The notes beneath the pieces were generated by a model. That model searched no databases, was not told the DNA's origin, and saw nothing but the letters and a program-made list of their open reading frames with translations. A stretch of 64,000 nt of DNA from Malacoraja senta (Eukaryota). Shown here in pieces: positions 16,558 through 63,748 of the stretch (within the stretch, counting starts at the first letter, position 1; the number at the start of each line of letters is the position of its first letter). A program made the translations under genes and the position numbers. The DNA lies in NCBI GenBank assembly GCA_038087875.1, contig CM075981.1, positions 19,840,001 through 19,904,000 on the forward strand, written 5' to 3'.

Positions 16558-19500
16558 GTAAGTCGGACATGTCCTGGGTCCTGTGGTCACCCCTCCCCCT
16601 GACACCTCATGTTTATCGACTAGCACTGAGCCGTGGGGCTTACTGGGGGCCATTTTGGGTTCTGTCCAGCCCTGAGCTCAGACATCCAAAATCCACCCCA
16701 TCTATACTCCGCTACCAGCCCTCCACAACACACGGCAGCCCCTCCCCCGTAACCCCTACACCTGCCCTACCCCCATAACACCCTCCAGCCCCTGCAGCCT
16801 TCCCTGTCCCTGTAACCCCTGTCCCGTAACCCTGCCCTATCCCTGTAACCTCCTACACTCCTGTCCCCGAAACCCTGTCGAGCTCGTACACCCTGCCCTA
16901 TCCCTGTAACCCGTTACAGACCCGACACCCTTCTATATCCCTGTAAGCCACTACAGACTAATCCCCTCCCCACCTCTGGCCCATACACCTCTCCCTGTTT
17001 CTGTGAGCCTCTGTACCCTCCTGCCCCTCATCATCCCATCCAGCTGCTGCATCTCTACTGGTTAGGTGTGCAGGCAGGGTGATTTGTGTTCATCACTGTC
17101 TGACTCTGTTGTACAGGGCAGCATGGGGACTGGGTTGAGGGCGATATTCGTACCGAGCACTAGTGGGGATAATGAAATTGGGGGAGGCTGCTCCTGGAAT
17201 TGAGTGAATCGTTGTCATTTTTTGGGGCGTGTACATGGTGTGCCCGAGGGTTTTGCTGGTACACCTGCCTTGACAGGGAATGGTTGGTGGGATGGGAGAG
17301 TCTAGCAATTGCCAAACGGTGACTGAATCCTCCCAGCCCTCCCTGTGCTGTTTCTGTCGAGACATGGTGATCAAAAGCCCTGATTAAAATGGCCGTCTGA
17401 TCTTATTTTGGTTTCAGTCTCTCTTCCTGTTGCAAAATGGGGGAGAGATGGTGATAGCGAGCGTGTGTGAAAGATGGGTCTGGCCGCTCTCATACCTGAG
17501 CTGGCCCAGGCTCCGGAAGCTGCATGGTCTGAGCCCGAGTTACTGTTGGGGCAACGTTCCCCAAGGCCATGAGCTGGAGAGGGGCCCATCTCACAATATA
17601 GAGACTGACTGTGCAAGTCTCACCAATTCCTGATACAACTGAAGCACAATCGCAAGGCTTTAATATTCAGTTGCCCCAGGACAGTTGTCTGAGTCCCCAA
17701 AGCCCATCAGGGAAGGAATTCCATGGATTCCCCGCTCTGGATGAAAACATTTGTCCCATCTCTACCCCTCACTCTGAGACGGGGGACCCCTGGCTCTAGA
17801 CACCCCAGCCAGGGCACAGCCCTCCTCACATCTGCCCCGTCGAGTCGTTGATTCAAACCCTCTCACAGTGAAGGGCCACGGACAGTCTCCCTCCTGACCG
17901 CTGTGCTTCCTGCGGGGAACGTCCAGTGAGTGGTACCCAGGGTCTCCCATGTCCTTCTCCACAACAACACCGTCCCATCTCTCTCCATCACAACAAAAGT
18001 GCCCCAGCTTTTTATTTCTTCCTCCACAGTATGGGGTGGAAGGAATAGAAAGGAATAGGAATAGTCCAAATGGGGTAACTGGATAGGGTGAACTGCTTTA
18101 AATACCTGGCCGTCCACATCACATAGGATCTAACATGGGCTACACACACTGTCGCAATGGTGAGTAAGGCTACGCAGCGCCTTTACCACCTCAGGCAGCT
18201 GAGGAAATTCAGAGTCTCTCTGAGGATCCTTCAGTGCTTCTACTCTGGGCTGGAGAAAGCATCTTGTCCAGCAACATCACAAGCTGATTTGTGAACAGCT
18301 CTGCCCAGGACAGGAAGGCTCTGCAGAGAGTAGTGCGTTCGGCCGAACGCACTATGGGAACAACACTCGCCCCCCTGCAGGACCTATACACCAGGAAGTG
18401 CAGATCCAGAGCCAGCAACATTATGGGGGACCCCTACCACCACAGCAACGGATTATTCCAGCTGCTACGGTCAGGCAAACGCCTCCGCTGTCACGCTGTG
18501 AAAACGGAGAGGATGGAGTTTCTTCCCATAGGCCATCAGGACTGTAAATTCTTATCTCACCGGGGACTAATTTACTGTACTAATTTACTGTTGTGTTCTC
18601 TGGAAAAAAATTTTTTTCTAACATGTAAATACTGATTCTGTTCTGTAGATTTTCCACAATCCGCAGGCATTGCCATTTTCATTTCACTGCACTTCTTGTA
18701 CGTGTATGTGACAAATAGTTGACTTGACTTGAAGTGGGTGACCTGCCATTTTTCCGTATTGTACTCCATCTGCCATGTCCCTGCCCATTCACTTGGACAG
18801 TATATATCCTCACAGAACCTCCTTCATCCATCCATCACCTATGCTACCCGCCATCCAAAATACGGACGTCTCTCAACCTTGTCTTTAGAACCTGTGGATG
18901 TAACCCAAGCTCCCTCTACTGCTTTACAATGCTTGATGCTCACTGTTCATTGCCTATTCCCTGTCTGGTTTCACCTCCCCAGATGCATCAGCTCACACTG
19001 AACCTCAAAATAATGGAGGGTACAGGTCACTGTCTCGCTCAGGGGAGTGTCCTGGGCCCAACTATTTTCAGCTGCATCATCAATGCCCTTCCATCCCAAG
19101 GTCAGAAGTGAGGATGATCATTGATTGCACAATGTTCAGTTCCATTCACAACTCCTCAGCTAGTGAACAGCCCGAGTCTGCATGCAGCAGGAGCCAGATA
19201 ACTGTGTCCAGGCCTAGAATCCTAACTTTGGGAAAGATGCAAGGGTTCCAGAAAGGATGGGCAAGGGATTACCCAACATGGTTCCACAGATGAGAGAGTT
19301 TTAGTTGTGGCAGAGAGGAGGGGAGATGGGAGTAGCTGGGATTGATCTGTATTGGAGAGGGGATGGGTGCAGGGCCTTGTGGAGTGAAGAGGCGGAGCGG
19401 AAAGGGTGGGAGAATGGGACGGGGATAGGCTCCTCGAAAGGACCAGCACAAACTCAGTGGGCTGAATGGCTGCCTTTCTGCTGGGCGAGTAGAAGGGGAA

Positions 19501-52498: not shown

Positions 52499-53174
52499 AG
52501 TTGGACCACTTGACAGTGGGAGCAGTCCCTAGTGGAGGTCTCTCTATACATTGGGGACCTGGGGCGGAGAGTTTTGCACAAAGCTGTGGCCTGTAATAGG
52601 TACTTGAGCCGGTTCACGGACTCTTCCCCTGCGTGTCATTTCTGCGGTGAGGAAGAGACCGTGTTCCACGTGTATATAGAGTGCGAGAGGTTGCAGCCCC
52701 TGTTCGAGTATCTGAAAGGGCTGCTCCTCCAGTTTTGGCTACATTTTAGTCCAACGCTATTAATCTATGGGCACCCGGTACAGAGGGGGGAGGGTCGGGA
52801 GGGAGGAGGGGGTCTCCCTGTCGGACTGCTCCTGGGCCTGGCCAAGATGGCCATTCGCGGGTCCAGGCAGCGGGCGGTCGATGGCCGCACAGCGGTCGGC
52901 TGCCTGCCCCTTTTCCGGGGTTACGTCCGTGCCCGCGTGTCCCTAGAGAGGGAACACGCGGTGTCCACGGGGACTGTGGAGGATTTCTGTGAACGCTGGT
53001 CACCGCAGGAGGTTGAATATATTATAGATAAAAATGTTAATATTTTAATTTGATAGTTTTGTGTAAATGTTTTTTAAATTGTGTGAGCTTTCTACCCTTC
53101 CTTGTAAATTGTACATTTGTTTAAAAATCTAATAAAAAAACCATTTACGGAAAAAAAAAGAAAAAGAAAATAAG
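52499..53174 (+). mobile_element. Tx1-clade LINE 3' fragment A with polyA and 7-bp TSD
   Basis: CHFCGEEETVFHVYIECERL Cys domain; AATAAA at 53131; gggcacg at 52492-52498 and 53175-53181. Confidence 0.88.
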
Positions 53175-53239
53175 GGGCACGGGTCAGACACAGTGTGAAG
53201 CCCCTTCTACACTGTCCCGTCACACACTCCCAGGGCACG

Positions 53240-53830
53240 AGTTGGACCACTTGACAGTGGGAGCAGTCCCTAGTGGAGGTCTCTCTATACATTGGGGACC
53301 TGGGGCGGAGAGTGTTGCACAAAGCTGTGGCCTGTAACAGGTACTTGAGCTGGTTCACGTACTCGCCAGCCGCCTGTCACTTCTGCGACGAAGAAGAGAC
53401 CGTGTTCCATGTGTACATGGAGTGTGAGAAGTTGCAGCCCCTGTTCGACCATCTGAAGGGGCTGCTCCTCACATTTTGGCTACATTTTGGCCCTACGTTC
53501 CTGATATTTGGGCACCCGGTACAGAGGTGGGAGGGTCTGGAGGAACGGGGGAGGGGGGGGGTGTTATCCCTGTCGGTCTGCTCCTGGGCCTGGCCAAGAT
53601 GGCCATTCGCGGGTCCAGGCAGCTGGTAGTCGATGGCCACACCGTGGTCGGCTACCTTCCCCTTTTCCGGGCCTACATCGGTGCCCGTGTGTCCCTGGAG
53701 AGGGAACACACGGTGTCCACGGGGACTTCGGAGGCCTTCGCCACGGGAGGCTGAGTTTATTGTTGATGATGATCACGTTATTGTAAAATTGATGACTGTT
53801 GCTTTGTAAACTGCCACAAACGCAGTTTTG
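53240..53830 (+). mobile_element. Tx1-clade LINE 3' fragment B
   Basis: CHFCDEEETVFHVYMECEKL; same 5' junction as fragment A. Confidence 0.85.
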
Positions 53831-54819
53831 ATCATGTTGTCCCCTCTCTTTCTTTCTCAAACTCCCCACCCCTCCCCTATATCTGACCCCTTCTCTCTCT
53901 ACCTGTCCTCAGGAGATTGCCCATGCCATTGTGGGAAGAGAAGAGGAGATTGAACAAGGTCTGGCCACCTGCTCAGAGTCCACAGACAGCCGGGGAATGA
54001 GACACGCAAGACTGACCACACAGAGAGCTGAGCCAGCAGGGACACAGGGTGAAGCCAACATCAGCACTGGAGGAGGAGATCAGATAACAGAACTAAGAAA
54101 AGAAATGATTAAACCCCTTCCAAAACGTGACAGAGTAACCAGAGAGAGACACAAACAAATGAATCATCCCAGGAACATTAACCCTCACCCACCTCTCCCA
54201 TCCATATACAGGGCAGCTTGTTTCCCATTGGCAGGGCACAGTGGTGCTTTCAGTGTGAGCCCAGGTGTGTGGGAACCTTCCATTCTGAAGAAGAGTCATG
54301 AGGAAAAATCATCACCTATCCACGTTCTCCGAAAATGCTACCTGAGTCACTAATTTGCTCCAGCACGTTGTCTCTTTTCTTGTAAACCAGCACCTGCATT
54401 TGCCAGTGTCAAATGCTCCTTCAGTAATGATGTTCATTTGTGTGAGGCCTGGTGTGAGGAACACTCTTTTATTAGTGATCTGCCACCTCCAGTTTAAATT
54501 CCATTTGGAATAATTTTGGAGGACCAGGAAACCAAGAATCCGGATTTCAGTGTGTGTGAGGGAACTCTGTTTCCAATCATGTTACTCTGTCCGTGTGAAT
54601 TCAATATAACGTTTGTACATGTGGCATTATTCTGTTCAAAACATTACGATTATTTCAAGAATTTCAGTCGGGTAACAGATAGCGCAGGGAGTGTGAGCCA
54701 AGGCCACGCAACTTTGGAGACAGCATCTGGCACACAGATCTGCAAGCGGAGGTACATATTGAATCAATTATTCCCTCTGTCGTTCAGCGACTAATGTATA
54801 CTTCACAGAACTGGCTCCG

Positions 54820-55545
54820 CAATGTCCTTACATTGTGAGCGGGTTAATCCCCTCTGACAGGGAACTAATGCCTTAGTGTGGGTGGAGAGAGGGGGTGAGA
54901 ACGTTAATCCCCTCTGACAGGGAACATGCTGCCCGGTGTCCTTACGTTGCGAGTGGTGAATGAGAGGTTAATCTCCTCTGACAGGGAATGGGCTCCTGGG
55001 GTGAGGGTGGAGAGAGCGGGTGAGAGGGTTAATCTCCTCTGAGTGAGAGGGTTAAACCCCTGTGAAAGGGTGTGAGGAGATGGGTTGAAAGGGTTAATCT
55101 CACCGATGAGGAACGGGCTGCCTGCAGTGGACAGGGAGAGAGTTTAACTGATGGGCAACGGGAGCCAGGGATGTGGATGGAGATGAGAGGGTTAATCTCC
55201 TCCGACAGGGAGCGGGCTGCTTGATGTCTTTAATTTTGAGCTGGTTTAATCCTCTCTGGCAGGCAACGTGCTGCCGGGGTCCTTACATTGTGAATGGTGA
55301 TTGAGAGGATTAATCCCCTCTGAAGAGGCAGCAATCTGCCTGGGATGTGTGTGGAGAGAGGGGGTTAACCCTCTTCAATGGGGAATGGGTTGCTGGGTGT
55401 GGATGGGGAGAGAGTTTACACTGAGAGGGAACGGGTGCCCCGGGTGTGGGTGGGGAGAGGGGGTGAGAGGGTTAATCAACTCTTATGGGGAACGGTCTAT
55501 CCTGGATGTGGATGGGGAGAGGGTTAACACTGAGAGGGACAGGCT
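54820..55545. repeat. Degenerate tandem array (gagagggttaatcccctctgacaggg core, about 12 copies)
   Basis: Core recurs every ~50-65 nt. Confidence 0.85.
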
Positions 55546-55784
55546 GCCAACTTTGGGAGTTTCTGGCTGCACTCCTTGCTCCCGCCTACCTCCTGGATGG
55601 GACGTGTCATCTGGAGCTTGATCTTGGGATCGGGACGTCCTGTAAGCAGCCTCCGATTACGGACCAGGGCTCCAGCACCGTGCCAGGCTGTGCCAGGCCG
55701 CGCCACGCCGCACAGCCCTACCCTGCCCTTTTCACCCTCGACACTCCTGCCCACCCCTGCAGTGGGGAGGTGAGGGTTTTGGGG

Positions 55785-56198
55785 ATGATGTTGGGACGGT
55801 CACTGGGACTGTGGTGCTTGCTGGTGTTGGGGGCGAGGAGGCAGCCGGGGGCACGAGGGCAGCCGGGGATGGTGGTGGGCACGTCACGGCTGCGGCGGGT
55901 GGAGCTGCTGGTGGTGGTGGACGTGGGTCTGGCGCACGCCCTGGGTGGGGATGTGCGCCCCTACGTGCTGGCGCTGCTGGGCGCGGCGGATCGGCTGTAC
56001 AGGCACCCGTCGCTGGGCAGCGCAGTGAGGCTGGTGGTCAGCCGGCTGGAGGTGGTGTGGGACCAGGCCATGGGTCCGCGGGTCGATGCCGACGCCAGGC
56101 AAACTCTGCACGCCTTCTGCCACTGGCAGCGGGAACGGCGGGCACTGGGAGACTGGGGAGAGGCACCGTACGATGCCGCCCTGCTGCTGACACGAGAG
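55785..56198 (+). CDS. ADAMTS-like first coding exon (signal peptide + start of catalytic domain)
   Basis: MMLGRSLGLWCLLVLGA-RRQPGARGQPGMVVGTSRLRR-VELLVVVD...YRHPSLGSAVRLVVSRL...TLHAFCHWQ...YDAALLLTRE|gtagg; acceptor at 55762. Confidence 0.88.
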
Positions 56199-59100
56199 GT
56201 AGGGCACACCCACCAGGGCACACTCACTGGGGCACGCCCACCAGGGCACACTCACTGGGGCACGCTCACCTGAGCACACACTGAGGAAAACCCCCTGGGA
56301 CACACCCGCTGGGTAACACTCACCGGGGCACACTCATCAGGGCATACTCATGGGGACACACTCACTGGCACAGTTAATAGGTTACACCCTCTGGGGCACA
56401 CTCATTGACACACTCACAGGGCACTATCGTGGGGGAACAATCACTGGAGCACACTCACTATGACACACTCACAGGCACATTCACCATGACAAACGCAAGG
56501 GCACACTCATAGACACAATTCCCATGACACATTCATGCGCAGATTCACCAGGGCACACTCACAGGCACAGTCACTGGCACACACTCACAGACACACTCAC
56601 AGACACACTCACGGCCACACTCACCATGCCACACGCACCACAACACACTCAAGGGCACATTCACAGGCACACTCACTAGGGTCTGTGCACTGAGGCTAGG
56701 GCACACACATCATGACACATTCACCGTAGCACACCCATCAGTGCACCCACAAAGGCACATTCACCAGGGCACACTCGATGGGAACACTTACCTTCGCACA
56801 CTTACAGTGACACCCAGGAGCACACTTGATGGGCACACTCAATGGGTACATTCATCAGGCACACTCACAGGGGCACACATCTTGGGTCACTCGCCAACTC
56901 AGGCCGACTGGGACACATTTGCTGTACTTGCGCATCAATGCTGACTGGCTGCATACACCTGCTGGGTCACACTGCCAACACTCATAAAATCACACCTGCA
57001 GGGGCACACTCAGTCACATCTGCCAGCGTACACTAGCCGCTCTCAATCCTCTGTACTTAGCATCGTACTCACCTTGTCATAATCTGTGGTCACACTCACC
57101 ACAGTCACATCACTGGGTCACACTCACTGGACCCACACCCACATTGCTTACAGCTGCCAGGATCACTCATGCTCACCACTCTTGCTATGCTCACACTCAC
57201 CTGGATCAGACAGACGGGACTCACAATCAATGGTGTGACACCGTGCTCACATTCACAGGATTCACTGTCACAGCAAGGGTCACTTGTCAGTCACACTCAC
57301 ATGGGGTCGAACACACACTCTCTCAATCTCTCCCTCCTTCTCTCTCTCGACCTCCCTCCTTCTCCCAATCTCTCCCTCCCTCTCTCTCTCTCTTACACTC
57401 TCTCTCTCCCAACACTTTCTCCCACTCTTTCTCTCCCTTCCCTCTTTAATCTCTCAATTCTCTCTTTGCCTCTATCTCTATCCCTCTCTCTCACTTCCCC
57501 CCTCCCTCCCACTCTCCCTCACTCTCACCCTATATCTCTCACCTCCCCTCCTTCCCTCTCTCTCTCCACCACTCCCTTTCTCCACCCTTCCCTCCCCCTC
57601 TCTCCACCCCTCCCTCCCTCTCTCCTCTCGCCTTTTTGGCAGTCATTGTTTATTGGGTTCTGCCACATTCCTTTGCAAAGGACCTTAAAGCAGCAATAAA
57701 ACATCAAGGAGGCTCTGGAACTGCTGACAAACATAATGTGGTCAGACAGAACCAAAGCTTTCTGAGTTGCCTCCCACAAATCCGCTCAACACCACAATAC
57801 TGCTTCAGTAACCACACACACAAACACTGTGACAACAACATAAAAATAAGTACAAATACTCCAACATAATCTGTCTACACTGCACCATGGTCCAGGACAT
57901 TGGCGTTCAGAGCCCCCTCCCCATCGCTCATGAAATTGGTAATCACTCATGCATGTTTTTAGATCCTTTTTTAGCCTTTACAAGGGAGTTTCTTGCAGTC
58001 ATAATTATTTTATCATGGTATTACATTCATCTCTGTACACTGATTGGTGTCTCAGAGTCCCTCGCTCTCAGGGAGATATCTGTACACTGACTCTCTCTGT
58101 ACACTGACTGTCTCTATACACTTTCTCCATACACTGCCCCTGTACACTGACTGTGGTAGAGTTGCTGCCTTACAGCGCTTTCAGTGCCAGAGACCCGAGT
58201 TCGATACTGACTGCAGGTGCCGTCTGTATGGAGTTTGTATGTTCTCCCTGTGACCTGCGTGCGTTTTCTCCGAGACCTTCGCTTTGCTCCCACACTCCAA
58301 AGACGTACAGGTTTGTAGGTTAATTGGCTTGGTATAAATGTAAAAATTGTCCCTAGTGTGTGTAGGGTAGTAATAATGTGTGGGGTTCGCTGGTCAGCGC
58401 GGACTCGGTGGGCTGAAGGGCCTGTTTCCGCGCCATATGTCTATCTCTAAACTCTCTCCATACATTCTCTGTACACTCTCTCTCCACACTCTACACAGTA
58501 TCTGTGCACTCTCTTTGTATACTCTGTACACAGTCTCTGTACACTCTCTACATAATCTCTATACACTCTCTCTGTACACTGTCTCTGTACACTGACTGTA
58601 CACGCTCTCTGTACACTCTCTCTGCACACTATAAAGTCTCTGTATAGTCTGCACATTGTCTCTGTGTATCTCTACACTGACTGTACTATCTCTCTATGTA
58701 CACTGAGTCTCTGTACATTGTCCCTGTACACTCTTTCTGTAAACTGACGGTCTATGCACTCTCTTTCTCTGCACACTCTCACTGTACACAGTCTGTACAA
58801 TCTCTAACAGCATTAACACCTTGACCCGTCAGAACCTCTGTCAGGAAAACTTCTGCGAGTCGCTGGGGCTTGGCCACATTGGGACGGTGTGTGAGGTGGA
58901 CAGTGGTCAGAACTGTGCCGTGGTCCAGGACATCGGCCTTCAGAGTGCCTTCACCATCGCTCATGAAATTGGTAATCACGTGCCTGGTTTTAAGTTCTTT
59001 TTTTTGCCTTTACAGGGGAGTTTTCTGCATAGTCACAATATTTTTGAACAATTATCATGGTATTACATTTATCAATACTGCTGTTTGTGCAGTTTGTAAA

Positions 59101-62100
59101 CAACAGGCACCAAATTACAATATATTTAACTCCACGATACATTCGAGCCCCTGCGGTGATCAACGTTCATGGAAGGCCCCCAGATTCCCCGTGAACACCA
59201 TGTGTTCCCTCTCCAGGGACACGCGGGCACGGAAGTAAGCCCGGAAGAAGGGCAGGCAGTCGACTTGGGTAGAGACATCACTGCCCATCCCCTGGACCCG
59301 ACAATGGCCACCTTGGCCAGGCCCAGGAGCAAACCGACAGGGAGACCCTCCCTCCCCTCCCTGACCCACCCCCTCCGTATGGGGTAACCAAAGGGCAGGA
59401 GCATGGGGCTGAAATACAGCCAAATCAGGGGAGCAGCCTCGTGCAATACTCCCACAGGGGCTGTAACCTCTCACATTCCATGTACACACAGTGACAGGCG
59501 GCTGGCGTGTCCGTGACCCGACGTACAAACCTATTACACGGCATGGCTGTGTACAACACCCCCCACCCCGGGTCCCTGATATAAAGGGAGAGGCCTCCCA
59601 CACAGAGAGAGACCTCCACTGGGGACCCTCCCCGCTGTCGGACAGTGGAACAGCCCGCCATGGCGTGTCCGGACGGGAGACGAGGGTGAGGAAGTGTAGA
59701 GTGTGCAGGAGCATCCCGTACAGCAAGCATTTCCCTGCGTCACGGCGCCTTGGGTATCTCGGAGACGGCTCATGTTGTGTGGGACCAGCTCCCGGGAAAG
59801 ATCCTGGGCCTTGGGTCTGGCGAGCAATTCCAGTGGAGCGGGGTTAGGCCCGTTCGGAATCACTCCATGCTCACGACAATCTCCGACACCCATCGTGACA
59901 GGGGGAGGACTGGCCACTCTCATAGCTACAACACCCCCTCCCTCTGAAGAGTAGCATGTTGGCGGAAAGTGACCAAATTTTAGGCTCTTAATTGCTCACA
60001 GTAAATACTTGGCCAACCTAGTTTTTACAAGGCTTAAAGCTGACCAGATATGGGACATCCTTGGCGCACTCTCCTTCCATAGTGAAGAGGCCCCAGAAAG
60101 GATCCGTTAACCTTTACGAGACTCTCTGCAGTAGCTTACAAAAGCCGGACTTGGGCTACGAAATGCGGCCTTAGTCCAAACACTTGCAGAGTCCTGAAAA
60201 GTTAGTCATGATCCATCCTGTCAAACACTTTCTCCTGATCAAGGGATAGAAAGGCGACTGAATGACTAACTTTCAGTTAGTCTGAACGAACAACTTCTAG
60301 GAAAGGTGGGTCGTGGAGCAGATGGATGTTGTCCTGGGTGGACCAGCCAGGATGTTGTAGGACCGGTCAGGGTGGATCACTTGGACCAGCACGGAGCCTG
60401 TCAATTTGCCATTGGCCGGGCATAAGGAAGCTTGTACTTTGTGCTGAGGCGAGACACTGGGCACTATTCCTTAACATAGAAACATAGAAACATAGAAAAT
60501 AGGTGCCGGAGTAGGCCATTCGGCCCTTTGAGCCTGCACCACCATTCAATATGATCATGGCTGATCATCCAACTCAGTATCCTGTACCTGCCTTCTCTCC
60601 ATACCCCCTGATCCCTTTAGCCACAAGGGCCACATCTAACTCCCTCTTAAATAAAGCCAATGAACTGGCCTCAACTACCTTCTGTGGCAGAAAATTCCAC
60701 AGATTCACCACTCTCTGAGTGAAAAATGATTTTCTCATCTCGGTCCTAAAAGACTTCCCCCTTATCCTTAAACTGTGACCCCTTGTTCTGGACTGCCCCA
60801 ACATCTGGAACAATCTTCCTGCATCTAGCCTGTCCAACCCCTTAAGAATTTTGTAAGTTTCTATAAGATCCCCCCTCAATCTTCTAAATTCTAGCGAGTA
60901 CAAGCCGAGTCTATCCAGTCTTTATTCATATGAAAGTCCTGCCATCCCAGGAATCAGTCTGGTGAACCTTCTCTGTACTCCCTCTATGGCAAGAATGTCT
61001 TTCCTCAGATTAGGAGACCAAAAATGTACGCAATACTCCAGGTGTGGCCTCACCAAGACCCTGTACAACTGCAGTAGAACCTCCCTGCTCTTATACTCAA
61101 ATCCTTTTGCTATGAATGCTAGCATACCATTCGCTTTCTTCACTGCCTGCTGCAGCTGCATGCCTACTTTCAATGACTGGTGTACCATGACACCCAGGTC
61201 TCGTTGCATCTCCCCTTTTTCCTAATCGGCCACCATTCAGATAATAGTCTACTTTCCTGTTTTTGCCACCAAAGTGGATAACCTCACATTTATTCACATT
61301 ATACTGCATCTGCCATGCATTTGCCCACTCACCCAACCTATCTAAGTCACCTTGCAGCCTCCTAGCATCCTCCTCAAAGCTAACACTGCCCCCCATCTTC
61401 ATGTCATCCGCAAATTTGGAGATGTTGCATTCAATTCCCTCATCCAGTTCATTAATATATATTGTAAATAGCTGGGGTCCCAGCACTGAGCCTTGCGGTA
61501 CCCCACTAGTCACTGCCTGCCATTCTGAAAAGGACCCGTTTACTCCTACTCTTTGCTTCCTGTCTGCCAGCCAGTTCTCTATCCACATCAATACTGAACC
61601 CCCCAATACCGTGTGCTTTAAGTTTGCATACTAATCTCTTATATGGGACCTTGTCGAAAGCCTTCTGAAAGTCCAGATATAACACATCCACTGGTTCTCC
61701 CTTATTCACTCTACTAGTTACATCCTCGAAAAATTCTATAAGATTCGTCAGACATGATTTACCTTTCATAAATCCATGCTGACTTTGTCCAATGATTTCA
61801 CCACTTTCCAAATGTGCTGCTATCCCATCTTTAATAACTGACCAGCATTTCCCCCACTACCAATGTTAGACTAACTGGTCTGTAATTCCCCGTTTTCTCT
61901 CTCCCTCCCTTTTTAAAAAGTGGGGTTGCATTAGCTACCCTCCAATCCTCAGGAACTACTCCAGAATCTAAAGAGTTTTGAAAAATTATCACTAATGCAT
62001 CCACTATTTCTGGGGCTACTTCCTTAAGTACTCTGGGATGCAGCCTATCTGGCCCTGGGGATTTATCGGCCTTTAATCCATTCAATTTACCTAACCACTT

Positions 62101-63748
62101 CCCAGCTAACCTGGATTTCACTCAGTTCCTCCATCTCATTTGACCCCCGGTCCCTTGCTATTTCCGGCAGATTATTTATGTCTTCCTTAATGTCTTCCTC
62201 AGTTATTCAATTGGTCTGCCATGTCCTTGCTCCCCATGATCAATTCACTAGTTTCTGGCTGCAAGGGACCTACATTTGTTTTAACTAATCTTTTTCTCTT
62301 CACATATCTATAAACACTTTTGCAGTCAGTTTTTATGTTCCCTGCCAGTTTTCTTTCATAATCTATTTTCCCTTTCCTAATTAAGCCCTTTGTCCTCCTC
62401 TGCTGGACTGAATTTCTCCCAGTCCTCTGGTAGGCTGCTTTTTCTGGCTAATTTGTATGCTTCACCTTTTGTTTTGATACTATCCCTGATTTCCCTTGTT
62501 ATCCCCAGATGCACTACCTTCCCTGATTTATTCTTTTGCCAAACTGGGATGAACAATTGTTGTAGTTCATCCATGCAGTCTTTAAATGCCTTCCATTGCA
62601 TATCCCTTTAAGAATCACTTGCCAGTCTATCTTGGCCAATTCACATCTCATACCCTCAAGTTACCTTTCTTTAAGTTCAGAACCCTTGTTTCTGAATTAA
62701 CAATGTCACTCTCCATCCTAATGAATTTAAAAACACAGATAACCAAAATCCTTCTGGGATGTCCTTAGGGGCAACTACATGAAGATCCTGAGGGAAAACA
62801 TGGTCACCGGGGAGATGCCCCTCTGCCCCTCTCATGAGGTAGTTGTCGTCCTGCCGCCCAAGCCCTGTCAGCCCCTCCATCCCAGGGGACATGCCCCTCC
62901 TGAGTGGTGCTGGGCATCGGTCAGCTCCCCCAATGCCAGGCGACCATTGAGATGTGGGAAACATCTGGGCCGACGGTTGGTAGGCCCTTCCAAAAGACCC
63001 CTCACGTCCTCGTTGGATGGATCCGACGAGAACAGCCTTGTAAAAGGACCAGGTTAAGGCACTAATCCTGTGCAGATCTGTGACAGTGGGGCAGTGTCTG
63101 CAGGTAACTCCACAAGCTACCAGGAAACATCACCATCCAGAGAGTAGAAGGGTGAAGTGTGGTCCAAATCATGCCATGTCTGGACCCATGACCTCACGTA
63201 TAAACCACAGGACCACTCAAGCTGCAAGTCCCTCAGTGCAGCTTCCCTCTCTTGTACAATCGCCACTGGAGTGTGTACCCACAATCCGACCCAGGCCATA
63301 CTCCAAGTCGAGCACCTCTCCCACAAGGCATCCGATTCATATTTCCCAACTCTTGGTTGACCCTCATGCAGACCCCTGGCCATATGAGCCATTCCCACAG
63401 TCCACCAAAACCTTCCAAAGTCTCACCACTTTTTAATGCTCTCTGACAACTAACCCTTCTAATTTTATTTCAGTGACTCACAGAGCTCCTATTAGTGTCT
63501 GACCTTGAAGTGTACTGGGACAGTGTAGAGGGAGCTTCACTCTGTGTCTGATTTTGTCAATGTTCTCTCCCTATTCGCAGGACATCTCATCGGTATGGCA
63601 CACGACAACTCGGAGATTTGTGTGCAGATGGGGGAGGACTCCTGGGGTCACCAGATGATGTCTCCCATGTTGTCCAGAGTCAACATGGCTGCGCCCTGGT
63701 CTCTCTGCAGCTTTCGCTTATCCCTCGGATTCTTTGCAAGTGGCAGGG
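55785..63748 (+). CDS. Divergent ADAMTS metalloprotease, aggrecanase clade (ADAMTS1/4/5/8/15-like); 3' part beyond the window
   Basis: Three exons with the family's intron positions (TRE|, HEIG|, GRG|) give an M12B catalytic domain with HEIGHLIGMAHD and the Met-turn MMSP. Confidence 0.92.
56200..57310. repeat. AC-rich degenerate minisatellite (gggcacactcac)
   Basis: Starts immediately after the ADAMTS exon donor. Confidence 0.9.
57887..58030 (+). pseudogene. Partial duplicate of ADAMTS exon 2 3' end, its donor and adjacent intron
   Basis: VQDIGVQSPLPIAHEIG|gtaatcac, then about 90 nt similar to 58972-59080. Confidence 0.85.
58150..58455 (+). mobile_element. HE1/V-SINE-like tRNA-derived SINE
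   Basis: B-box gagttcgatac, core ggagtttgtatgttctccc, CR1-like 3' end. Confidence 0.85.
58440..58800. repeat. tctctgtacac minisatellite
   Basis: Many degenerate 11-13-nt units. Confidence 0.88.
58833..58971 (+). CDS. ADAMTS-like catalytic exon 2
   Basis: cag|aac ... att g|gtaat; NLCQENFCESLGLGHIGTVCEVDSGQNCAVVQDIGLQSAFTIAHEIG. Confidence 0.93.
59150..60330 (-). mobile_element. Tx1-clade LINE fragment
   Basis: GLLLGLAKVAI.GSR and LYIRDPGW.VLY..MPCNRFV frames homologous to 52499-53174. Confidence 0.8.
60473..62723 (-). mobile_element. CR1 LINE, ~2.25 kb, frameshifted RT
   Basis: Same family as 2614-4860; (AACATAGA)3 tail. Confidence 0.96.
62760..63440 (-). mobile_element. Degraded L1/Tx1-clade fragment
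   Basis: Weak similarity (PFYSLDGDVSW) to ORF2 C-terminal region. Confidence 0.45.
63581..63748 (+). CDS. ADAMTS-like catalytic exon 3
   Basis: cag|ga cat ... agg g|gtgag; HLIGMAHDNSEICVQMGEDSWGHQMMSPMLSRVNMAAPWSLCSFRLSLGFFASGRG. Confidence 0.93.

What the first reader, a model, noticed from the sequence alone, without database searches (positions are those of the whole stretch)
55763..56198. ADAMTS apparently lacking the prodomain: signal peptide + 21-aa linker + catalytic domain
Seen: in one exon, a 17-aa signal-like peptide (MMLGRSLGLWCLLVLGA) is followed by only 21 aa ending in RLRR, then VELLVVVD, the first strand of the catalytic domain. Established: aggrecanase-clade ADAMTS have a ~200-aa prodomain removed by furin; ADAMTS13 is the known short-propeptide exception. 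The zinc motif and catalytic Glu are intact, but several acidic positions differ (CDTLG to CESLG, IEDDG to VQDIG, FLDNG to FFASG). Inference: a secreted protease that may be active without normal zymogen control. Alternative: an upstream phase-2 coding exon at the 55762 acceptor would make the hydrophobic stretch a type II anchor.
Basis: partly seen in the sequence, partly recalled or inferred. Interest (0 to 1): 0.75.

Follow-up and report, generated by a model that had tools for sequence, protein, structure and literature searches.

The report
Skate ADAMTS protease without a prodomain
This skate gene encodes a secreted matrix-cutting zinc protease of the ADAMTS family that starts with a signal peptide and goes almost straight into the catalytic domain. 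The same holds in other rays, while sharks keep only a stub, so this lineage has lost the roughly 200-residue prodomain that normally keeps such enzymes inactive.

Summary
Exon 1 (ATG 55785 to donor 56198) encodes a 17-residue signal-like peptide, a 21-residue linker and then the first half of a reprolysin catalytic domain. Exons 2 (58833-58971) and 3 (63581-63748) complete an intact HEIGHLIGMAHD zinc site.

Spliced transcript contigs from a closely related skate run unspliced through the suspected acceptor at 55762, start near 55702, and join exon 1 to exon 2. No prodomain-like exon lies in the window.

The trait is shared across the clade:
- Three skates, a sawfish and two manta rays have 31-38 residues before the catalytic domain.
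- Sharks have 72-77 residues, including a furin-type R-x-x-R|SISRTRH site.

The skate RLRR aligns with residues inside the mature N-terminus of ADAMTS5, not with the canonical furin site.

RefSeq calls the gene ADAMTS4, ADAMTS4-like or ADAMTS5-like. It sits in the FCER1G/SLAM neighbourhood, where ADAMTS4 lies in humans. Its sequence, however, is sister to ADAMTS5, and grouping it with ADAMTS4 is rejected (AU p = 2e-5).

Every member also replaces both carboxylate ligands of the S2'-loop calcium site (Asp to Asn, Glu to Gln). Purifying selection among rays (omega about 0.17) argues against a pseudogene.

This is a new variant of a known kind. Activity and regulation are untested.

The parts
55702..55784 (+). 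Minimum 5' UTR of exon 1. It spans the unused AG at 55761-55762.
   Evidence: A 295-nt RNA contig of a close relative lies colinear on 55702-55995. There is no loose end and no depth further upstream or in the introns.
55597..55773 (+). Upstream ORF (MGRVIWSLILG...) in a different frame from the enzyme. It corresponds to the start of the 61-64-aa N-extension in RefSeq models of two other skates.
   Evidence: The frame differs because of a 5-nt indel at about 55696-55700 relative to Amblyraja. No RNA depth is seen here in run X1.
55785..55835 (+). Start codon and 17-residue signal-like peptide MMLGRSLGLWCLLVLGA.
   Evidence: It has a 12-residue uncharged core with mean hydropathy 2.35 after a basic residue. 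The homologous N-terminal Met in Pristis has an in-frame TAA 27 codons upstream.
55836..55898 (+). 21-residue linker RRQPGARGQPGMVVGTSRLRR. It is a remnant of the end of the shark mini-propeptide, and its furin site has decayed.
   Evidence: It aligns to shark PGAKARKGR|SISRTRH. It contains an 18-nt tandem duplication at 55829-55868. It has pLDDT below 50 in the model.
55899..56198 (+). Exon 1, catalytic domain N-terminal half (VELLVVVD ... LLLTRE).
   Evidence: Pfam and PDB matches. The donor is confirmed by the RNA joint 56196/8 to 58831/3.
57887..57940 (+). Pseudo-exon: a partial copy of the exon 2 3' end plus the start of intron 2.
   Evidence: It is also present in Amblyraja at L001:11870-11935. 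Run X1 shows no RNA depth here.
58833..58971 (+). Exon 2 (139 nt): the S2' loop CQENFCESLG, VQDIG and the first zinc ligands HEIG.
63581..63748 (+). Exon 3 (168 nt): HLIGMAHD, the Met-turn, and FFASGR. The gene continues beyond the window.

Best explanation
This is the 5' part of a real, expressed gene for a secreted ADAMTS zinc metalloprotease of the aggrecanase clade. It is the skate member of an elasmobranch lineage that is ADAMTS5-like in sequence and domain order, but sits where ADAMTS4 sits in humans. Translation starts at 55785. A cleavable signal peptide is followed by about 21 unstructured residues and then the catalytic domain, so the protein is made essentially in its mature form, with no prodomain and no cysteine switch. 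Sharks keep a propeptide of about 55 residues with a furin site. Rays lost that as well, and the skate linker is its decayed remnant, lengthened by a 6-residue tandem duplication. What is shown: the gene structure, the splicing, the lack of a prodomain, conservation across the clade, intact catalytic residues, and purifying selection among rays. What is inferred: the enzyme folds and is secreted without a chaperoning propeptide, as ADAMTS13 does, and its activity is restrained by other means. Candidates for that restraint are expression level, TIMP-type inhibitors, ancillary domains, or the altered S2' loop, whose calcium site has lost both carboxylate ligands.
For: Sequence and family. RNA: in run X1 the contig is unspliced through 55762, exon 1 is joined to exon 2, and depth is zero in introns and upstream. 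Orthologues: 94% (Amblyraja), 96% over 240 aa (a third skate), and 66-71% (Mobula, Pristis). All have 31-38 residues before VELL, and sharks have 72-77 with R-x-x-R|SISRTRH. Start codon: Pristis has an in-frame stop 27 codons upstream of its ATG. No prodomain: tblastn of 123 ADAMTS N-terminal regions finds nothing credible. The Pfam propeptide family is absent here but present in alligator ADAMTS4. Tree: sister to ADAMTS5 with support 100/99, and AU rejects a clade with ADAMTS4, p = 1.7e-5. Selection: skate versus sawfish catalytic domain dN/dS = 0.17. Structure: residues 1-34 are disordered, the catalytic and disintegrin-like fold has pTM 0.81, and the best PDB matches are ADAMTS4/1/5 with target TM about 0.9.
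Against: The RNA comes from a related species about 2% divergent, not from the window's own species, and it consists of assembled contigs. A contig end at 55702 is therefore not a mapped transcription start. RefSeq models of two other skates begin 61-64 codons upstream, in frame. Between the two skates dN/dS is 0.6-0.8, although on only 14-19 substitutions (19 over all 240 codons, 14 in the catalytic part) and with an unusually low dS. No protein-level data exist on signal cleavage, secretion or activity. The rest of the gene lies outside the window.
Confidence: 0.72

Rival explanations
1. A prodomain exon exists further upstream, as in ADAMTS4, whose exon 1 encodes the signal peptide and prodomain. 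It would be spliced to the AG at 55762, making the hydrophobic stretch internal.
For: Alligator ADAMTS4 does have an intron exactly at the prodomain/catalytic border, with exon 1 covering aa 1-212. A plausible acceptor sequence sits at 55762, and the frame is open upstream of it.
Against: The RNA contig runs 61 nt through that site unspliced and has no loose end. No prodomain-like coding sequence is found in the 55 kb upstream or in the 10 kb upstream in Amblyraja and Pristis. The 55762 site lies 45 codons before VELL, whereas the ADAMTS4 intron lies about 9 codons before it. Six annotated orthologues show no such exon.
Confidence: 0.06
2. Translation starts at an upstream ATG, as in the RefSeq models of two other skates (MGRVIW...). 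That would give a propeptide of about 75-80 residues, removed at RLRR.
For: In Amblyraja and a third skate the upstream ATG is in frame and open for 61-64 codons. RLRR fits the furin consensus R-x-[K/R]-R.
Against: In the window that ATG is in another frame and its ORF stops at 55773. The region between is an indel-prone GC repeat. Run X1 shows no RNA depth over it. Pristis cannot have such an extension. Substitutions in the extension are mostly non-synonymous.
Confidence: 0.07
3. The gene is decaying or has become a non-proteolytic protein. On this view the loss of the prodomain and of the calcium ligands are symptoms of relaxed constraint.
For: The stem branch is very long, 1.12 substitutions per site. 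Skate-versus-skate dN/dS is 0.6-0.8. One skate model is flagged LOW QUALITY. The Asp-to-Asn and Glu-to-Gln changes fall at a functional calcium site (PMC4885070).
Against: The reading frame is open and all domains are kept in sharks and rays. The zinc ligands, catalytic Glu, Met-turn and all 8 catalytic-domain cysteines are invariant. dN/dS is 0.17 across rays. The transcript is spliced and reasonably abundant.
Confidence: 0.1

Closest known systems
ADAMTS5 (aggrecanase-2)
   Same: It is the sister group in the tree (100/99). The domain order is the same, including a single C-terminal thrombospondin repeat. The mature N-terminus motif is shared: sharks have SISRTRHVELL and ADAMTS5 has SISRARQVELL. 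Exon 1 runs into the catalytic domain, and there are 8 coding exons.
   Different: There is no ~245-residue prodomain, and in rays no furin site. Identity is only about 40%, on a very long branch. The S2'-loop consensus CGxxxCDTL has become CQxxxCESL, and both carboxylate ligands of that loop's calcium site are replaced. It lies next to FCER1G/SLAM genes rather than ADAMTS1. Whether cartilaginous fishes also have a canonical ADAMTS5 could not be established.
ADAMTS4 (aggrecanase-1)
   Same: RefSeq names the Amblyraja gene ADAMTS4. It is a member of the aggrecanase clade.
   Different: The AU test rejects a common clade (p = 1.7e-5). ADAMTS4 ends at the spacer, whereas this protein has a further thrombospondin repeat. 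ADAMTS4 has a Pfam-detectable prodomain on its own exon.
ADAMTS13 (von Willebrand factor-cleaving protease)
   Same: [quoted passage not shown] It is therefore the functional precedent for a near-prodomain-less ADAMTS. The shark form, with about 55 residues and a furin site, is closely analogous.
   Different: It is not closely related: exon 1 scores 1.5e-4 against ADAMTS13 but 1e-19 against ADAMTS5. The ancillary domains differ. Rays go further than ADAMTS13 by having no propeptide and no furin site at all.

Membership tests
ADAMTS (M12B metalloprotease with thrombospondin repeats) | Reprolysin catalytic domain with HExxHxxGxxHD, a Met-turn and 8 conserved cysteines | tested here: met
   Pfam PF01421. 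HEIGHLIGMAHD and QMMS are present. The cysteines are invariant in the 29-sequence alignment. The fold matches ADAMTS4/1/5 with target TM about 0.9.
ADAMTS (M12B metalloprotease with thrombospondin repeats) | Disintegrin-like domain, central TSR, cysteine-rich domain and spacer | tested here: met
   All are found in the 94%-identical Amblyraja orthologue. In this genome they lie beyond the window's end.
ADAMTS (M12B metalloprotease with thrombospondin repeats) | N-terminal prodomain of about 200 aa ending in a furin site | tested here: not met
   There is no PF01562 match and no tblastn hit. Only 21 residues lie between the signal peptide and the catalytic domain. The canonical furin position reads QPGM in skates and PGE-R / PSE-Q in other rays.
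Aggrecanase clade (ADAMTS1/4/5/8/15) | Falls inside the clade, with ADAMTS9/20 as outgroup | tested here: met
   The clade has support 100/100.
Aggrecanase clade (ADAMTS1/4/5/8/15) | S2'-loop consensus CGxxxCDTL with Ca-coordinating Asp320 and Glu349 (ADAMTS4 numbering, PMC4885070) | tested here: not met
   All 7 elasmobranch sequences have Asn, CQxxxCESL and Gln. All 13 canonical sequences have Asp and Glu, and 12 of the 13 have CDTL (the Eublepharis ADAMTS4 reads CGTL).
ADAMTS4 orthologue | Forms one clade with sarcopterygian ADAMTS4 | tested here: not met
   AU p = 1.7e-5, with a log-likelihood difference of 42.
ADAMTS4 orthologue | No thrombospondin repeat after the spacer | tested here: not met
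   TSP1_ADAMTS is found at 736-787 of the skate protein, and none in alligator ADAMTS4.
ADAMTS4 orthologue | Conserved neighbourhood (FCER1G / NDUFS2 / B4GALT3 in humans) | tested here: inconclusive
   FCER1G and a SLAM/CD2 gene lie upstream according to earlier notes, and my quick motif check did not reproduce this. A RhoGAP gene lies downstream in Amblyraja, but its identity was not resolved. NDUFS2 and B4GALT3 were not looked for.
ADAMTS5 orthologue | Groups with ADAMTS5 and has a single C-terminal TSR | tested here: met
   The topology cannot distinguish an orthologue from an ancient paralogue.
ADAMTS5 orthologue | Tandem neighbour of ADAMTS1 | tested here: not met
   No other ADAMTS exon is found in the 64-kb window or in the 10-kb flanks in Amblyraja and Pristis. 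The range searched is limited.

The most novel reading that the evidence does not exclude
Cartilaginous fishes retain an ADAMTS5/8-type duplicate in the ADAMTS4 (1q23-like) paralogon that bony vertebrates lost. This enzyme shed its prodomain in steps: about 55 residues with a furin site in sharks, and none in rays. At the same time it converted both carboxylate ligands of the S2'-loop calcium site to amides. Latency control may thus have moved from a removable prodomain to the loop's own closed, zinc-capping conformation. That would be a second, independent route (after ADAMTS13) to a zymogen-free ADAMTS.
Probability: 0.2. Interest if true: 0.7.

Novelty: new variant of a known kind. Interest (0 to 1): 0.5.

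Why it matters
ADAMTS proteases are described as zymogens that need furin removal of a prodomain. Removing the propeptide abolishes secretion of ADAMTS9 and ADAMTS17, and ADAMTS13 is the textbook exception (PMC8275829). Here an aggrecanase-type ADAMTS has lost the prodomain naturally, and the loss has been kept under selection in sharks and rays, animals whose skeleton is cartilage. This natural experiment shows that an ADAMTS4/5-like catalytic domain can be kept without its prodomain; folding without it is inferred, not shown. It also points to residues (the S2' loop and its calcium site) that may compensate. That bears on how aggrecanase activity, a drug target in osteoarthritis, can be restrained. 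The gene also exposes a conflict between position (the ADAMTS4 locus) and sequence (ADAMTS5-like) that published ADAMTS histories, which did not sample cartilaginous fishes (PMC4349717), do not cover.

Tried and rejected
- ADAMTS13 orthologue was my first guess and was rejected: exon 1 scores 1e-19 against ADAMTS5 but 1.5e-4 against ADAMTS13.
- A recurrent weak tblastn hit of ADAMTS15 prodomains at 19425-19481 on the minus strand was rejected. It is 19 residues inside stop-ridden, low-complexity sequence, on the wrong strand and 36 kb away.
- I looked for remnants of the shark mini-propeptide upstream in the skate and sawfish loci. Only the last ~10 residues align. The shark propeptide shows no significant similarity to canonical prodomains.
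- I searched for a canonical ADAMTS5 in cartilaginous fishes. None was among the 120 best full-length hits or the 120 best fragment hits. This is inconclusive, because the lists are cut off at about 67% identity.
- DNA for the shark loci was not available.
- The identity of the downstream RhoGAP gene could not be resolved from a low-complexity exon.
- A regex check for FCER1G motifs in the window found nothing, probably because the exons are tiny.
- Earlier-findings look-ups by words gave nothing.
- Literature searches found no description of this gene lineage.
- A search for exon numbering of mouse Adamts4/5 knock-outs gave nothing usable, so that argument is not used.

Full report
**What is in the sequence.**
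- The + strand ORF from ATG 55785 to the GT donor after 56198 translates to MMLGRSLGLWCLLVLGA, then RRQPGARGQPGMVVGTSRLRR, then VELLVVVD...LLLTRE.
- This exon alone matches Pfam Reprolysin from its residue 39 to profile position 3.
- Against PDB sequences it scores ADAMTS5 1e-19, ADAMTS1 1e-18, ADAMTS4 6e-16 and ADAMTS13 1.5e-4.
- Exon 2 (58833-58971, 139 nt) encodes NLCQENFCESLG...VVQDIGLQSAFTIAHEIG.
- Exon 3 (63581-63748, 168 nt) encodes HLIGMAHD..., the Met-turn, and ...FFASGR.
- The zinc motif HEIGHLIGMAHD is intact.
- The window ends 250 nt later, and it contains no N runs.

**Transcript evidence.** Contigs of four public runs were laid on 53100-59050. Run X1 behaves as RNA: its depth is zero over introns and over unique upstream sequence. 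It comes from a close relative, about 2% divergent.
- One 295-nt contig lies colinear on 55702-55995. It crosses the putative acceptor at 55762 by 61 nt, with no loose end.
- A 2519-nt contig covers 56010-56196/8, jumps to 58831/3-58972, and continues beyond the stretch. Exon 1 is therefore spliced to exon 2 exactly as predicted.
- There is no depth between 54692 and 55686.
- The other runs are DNA of this and related skates.
- Limits: the RNA is not from the window's own species, and a contig end is not a mapped transcription start.

**No prodomain nearby.**
- tblastn of the pre-catalytic regions of 123 ADAMTS proteins against the whole window gave nothing credible.
- Full-length ADAMTS queries hit only the three exons.
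- A repeated weak hit at 19425-19481 on the minus strand is a 19-residue chance match in low-complexity sequence.

**Orthologues.** A HMMER scan of 1.8 billion representative proteins found two close relatives. A named search then found the whole set:
- Skates and rays: Amblyraja radiata 'ADAMTS4' (94% identical), Pristis and Mobula 'ADAMTS5-like'.
- Sharks: Scyliorhinus, Mustelus, Chiloscyllium, Hemiscyllium and Rhincodon, named 'ADAMTS4-like' or 'ADAMTS5-like'.
- A third skate is 231/240 identical over the window's exons.
- None of them carries the Pfam propeptide family.

Their N-termini:
- Pristis: MISGRLLGLSCLLVVGARGGSPGERWLSRTRQ|VELL.
- Mobula: MSGGLLGLSCLLVVGVQEGLPSEQWVSRTRH|VELL.
- Sharks: a signal peptide, about 55 residues, then (R/K)xxR|SISRTRH VELL.
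- Canonical ADAMTS5 reads RRxRR|SISRARQ VELL.

It follows that:
- Sharks keep a mini-propeptide with a furin-type site at the canonical position.
- Rays have lost it.
- The skate RLRR aligns with RTRH/RARQ, residues that belong to the mature enzyme in ADAMTS5.
- The skate segment PGARGQPGM aligns with shark PGAKARKGR, so it is the decayed furin region.
- The skate linker is 6 residues longer because of an 18-nt tandem duplication, GAR(R/G)QP twice.

**Which start codon.**
- RefSeq models of two other skates begin 61-64 codons upstream, at MGRVIW.
- In the window that ATG (55597) is in another frame and its ORF stops at 55773. The cause is a 5-nt length difference in a GC-rich repeat.
- Run X1 shows no RNA depth over it.
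- In Pristis an in-frame TAA lies 27 codons upstream of the ATG, with no other ATG between them.
- I conclude that the hydrophobic stretch is N-terminal.
- Its uncharged core is 12 residues, preceded by Arg and followed by small residues (VLG-A). This is typical of a cleavable signal peptide and too short for a membrane anchor. This is a manual assessment, not a SignalP run.

**Identity of the gene.**
- A maximum-likelihood tree of the catalytic-to-spacer region places the elasmobranch clade as sister to ADAMTS5, with support 100/99 (32 sequences, LG+C20, ADAMTS9/20 as outgroup). Its stem branch is 1.12 substitutions per site.
- Forcing it together with ADAMTS4 costs 42 log-likelihood units (AU p = 1.7e-5).
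- Like ADAMTS5 and unlike ADAMTS4, it has one thrombospondin repeat after the spacer.
- It has 8 coding exons in Amblyraja.
- Alligator ADAMTS4 has an extra intron exactly at the prodomain/catalytic border. Exon number therefore cannot separate 'ADAMTS5-type' from 'ADAMTS4 minus exon 1'.
- Earlier notes of this scan place FCER1G at 25.9-27.1 kb and a SLAM/CD2 gene at 40-44 kb of this window. In humans both lie at 1q23 beside ADAMTS4 (my own knowledge). I did not verify these two genes myself.
- In Amblyraja the downstream neighbour is a RhoGAP gene.
- Brunet et al. (PMC4349717) report that ADAMTS4 was lost in ray-finned fishes and describe the ADAMTS1-5 and ADAMTS8-15 tandem pairs. They sampled no cartilaginous fish.
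- I could not find a canonical ADAMTS5 from cartilaginous fishes in the capped hit lists. Whether this gene is a relocated, fast-evolving ADAMTS5 or an ancient ADAMTS5-type duplicate in the ADAMTS4 paralogon therefore remains open. I lean towards the duplicate.

**Is it functional?**
- All 8 catalytic-domain cysteines, the three zinc histidines, the catalytic Glu and the Met-turn are kept in every member.
- dN/dS for the catalytic exons is 0.17 between skates and sawfish (dS 0.68).
- Between the two skates dN/dS is 0.6-0.8, but that rests on only 14-19 substitutions (19 over all 240 codons, 14 in the catalytic part) and an oddly low dS of 0.03-0.04. Flanking non-coding DNA is 9-10% divergent.
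- An AlphaFold2 model of the Amblyraja N-terminus through the disintegrin-like domain has pTM 0.81. Residues 1-34 score below pLDDT 50, the first strand begins at residue 37, and part of the S2' loop has low confidence.
- Foldseek finds ADAMTS4, ADAMTS1 and ADAMTS5 structures first (target TM about 0.9, 38-41% identity).

**A second trait shared across the clade.**
- According to Takeda's review (PMC4885070), ADAMTS4 switches between two forms. The open form has a calcium ion held by the side chains of Asp320 and Glu349 and by backbone oxygens of the S2' loop (consensus CGxxxCDTL). The closed, autoinhibited form has lost that calcium, and the loop folds onto the zinc.
- In all seven elasmobranch sequences these positions read Asn, CQxxxCESL and Gln. 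All thirteen canonical ADAMTS1/4/5/8/15 sequences keep Asp and Glu, and twelve of the thirteen keep CDTL (one gecko ADAMTS4, Eublepharis, reads CGTL).
- The site-I residue in CLLD is Asn, as it is in snake-venom enzymes.
- That these changes alter calcium control of the active site is an inference. That they compensate for the missing prodomain is speculation.

**Mechanism proposed.**
- The protein enters the secretory pathway through its signal peptide. It then leaves with a short, floppy N-terminal tail in front of a ready-made catalytic domain.
- Reviews state that ADAMTS enzymes are generally made as zymogens, and that removing the propeptide abolishes secretion of ADAMTS9 and ADAMTS17. 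ADAMTS13's very short propeptide is dispensable (PMC8275829).
- The ray enzyme would be a second case of the ADAMTS13 kind, arising inside the aggrecanase clade, with the shark form as an intermediate.
- Furin cleavage at the skate RLRR cannot be excluded. It is unlikely to be the conserved mechanism, because the motif is specific to skates and abuts strand beta-1.

**Novelty and score.**
- The proteins already exist as automatic RefSeq models with inconsistent names.
- I found no paper describing the missing prodomain, the altered calcium site or the conflict between locus and tree.
- It is a new variant of a known kind, and of moderate interest.

Noticed in passing
window 57887-57940 (and about 150 nt after it): This is a partial duplicate of the 3' end of exon 2 (VQDIGVQSPLPIAHEIG) together with the start of intron 2. 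The same pseudo-exon is present in Amblyraja (L001:11870-11935), so it predates the split of these skates. It is not covered by RNA in run X1.
   Followed up: partly
window 55829-55868: An 18-nt tandem duplication lies inside the coding linker (GARRQP / GARGQP). It straddles the predicted signal-peptidase site and is absent from sawfish and manta orthologues.
   Followed up: partly
window 55560-55784 and exons 1-3: The 225 nt upstream of the ATG and the exons are 97-98% identical to Amblyraja. Synonymous divergence is only 0.03-0.04, while surrounding non-coding DNA differs by 9-10%. This suggests a conserved GC-rich promoter or 5' UTR, or locally low mutation or biased gene conversion.
   Followed up: no
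window 58075-58472: A very high-copy interspersed repeat, SINE-like with a poly-A tail in the loose ends, lies in intron 1. Summed contig depth is 1e5-1e6 in all four runs, including the RNA run.
   Followed up: no
window 60570-62120, minus strand: LINE reverse-transcriptase ORFs lie inside intron 2. Related copies sit downstream of the gene in Amblyraja (L001:27366-28678).
   Followed up: no
window 56201-56776 and 58440-58630: There are long imperfect microsatellite or minisatellite arrays (units AGGGCACACTCACC and TCTGTACACTCTC). The first begins immediately after the exon 1 donor and the second ends about 200 nt before exon 2.
   Followed up: no
L001 29723-36898 (Amblyraja), minus strand: The downstream neighbour of the orthologue is a RhoGAP-domain gene with a long proline-rich tail. 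If it is ARHGAP30, it would extend the synteny with human 1q23. Its identity was not resolved.
   Followed up: partly
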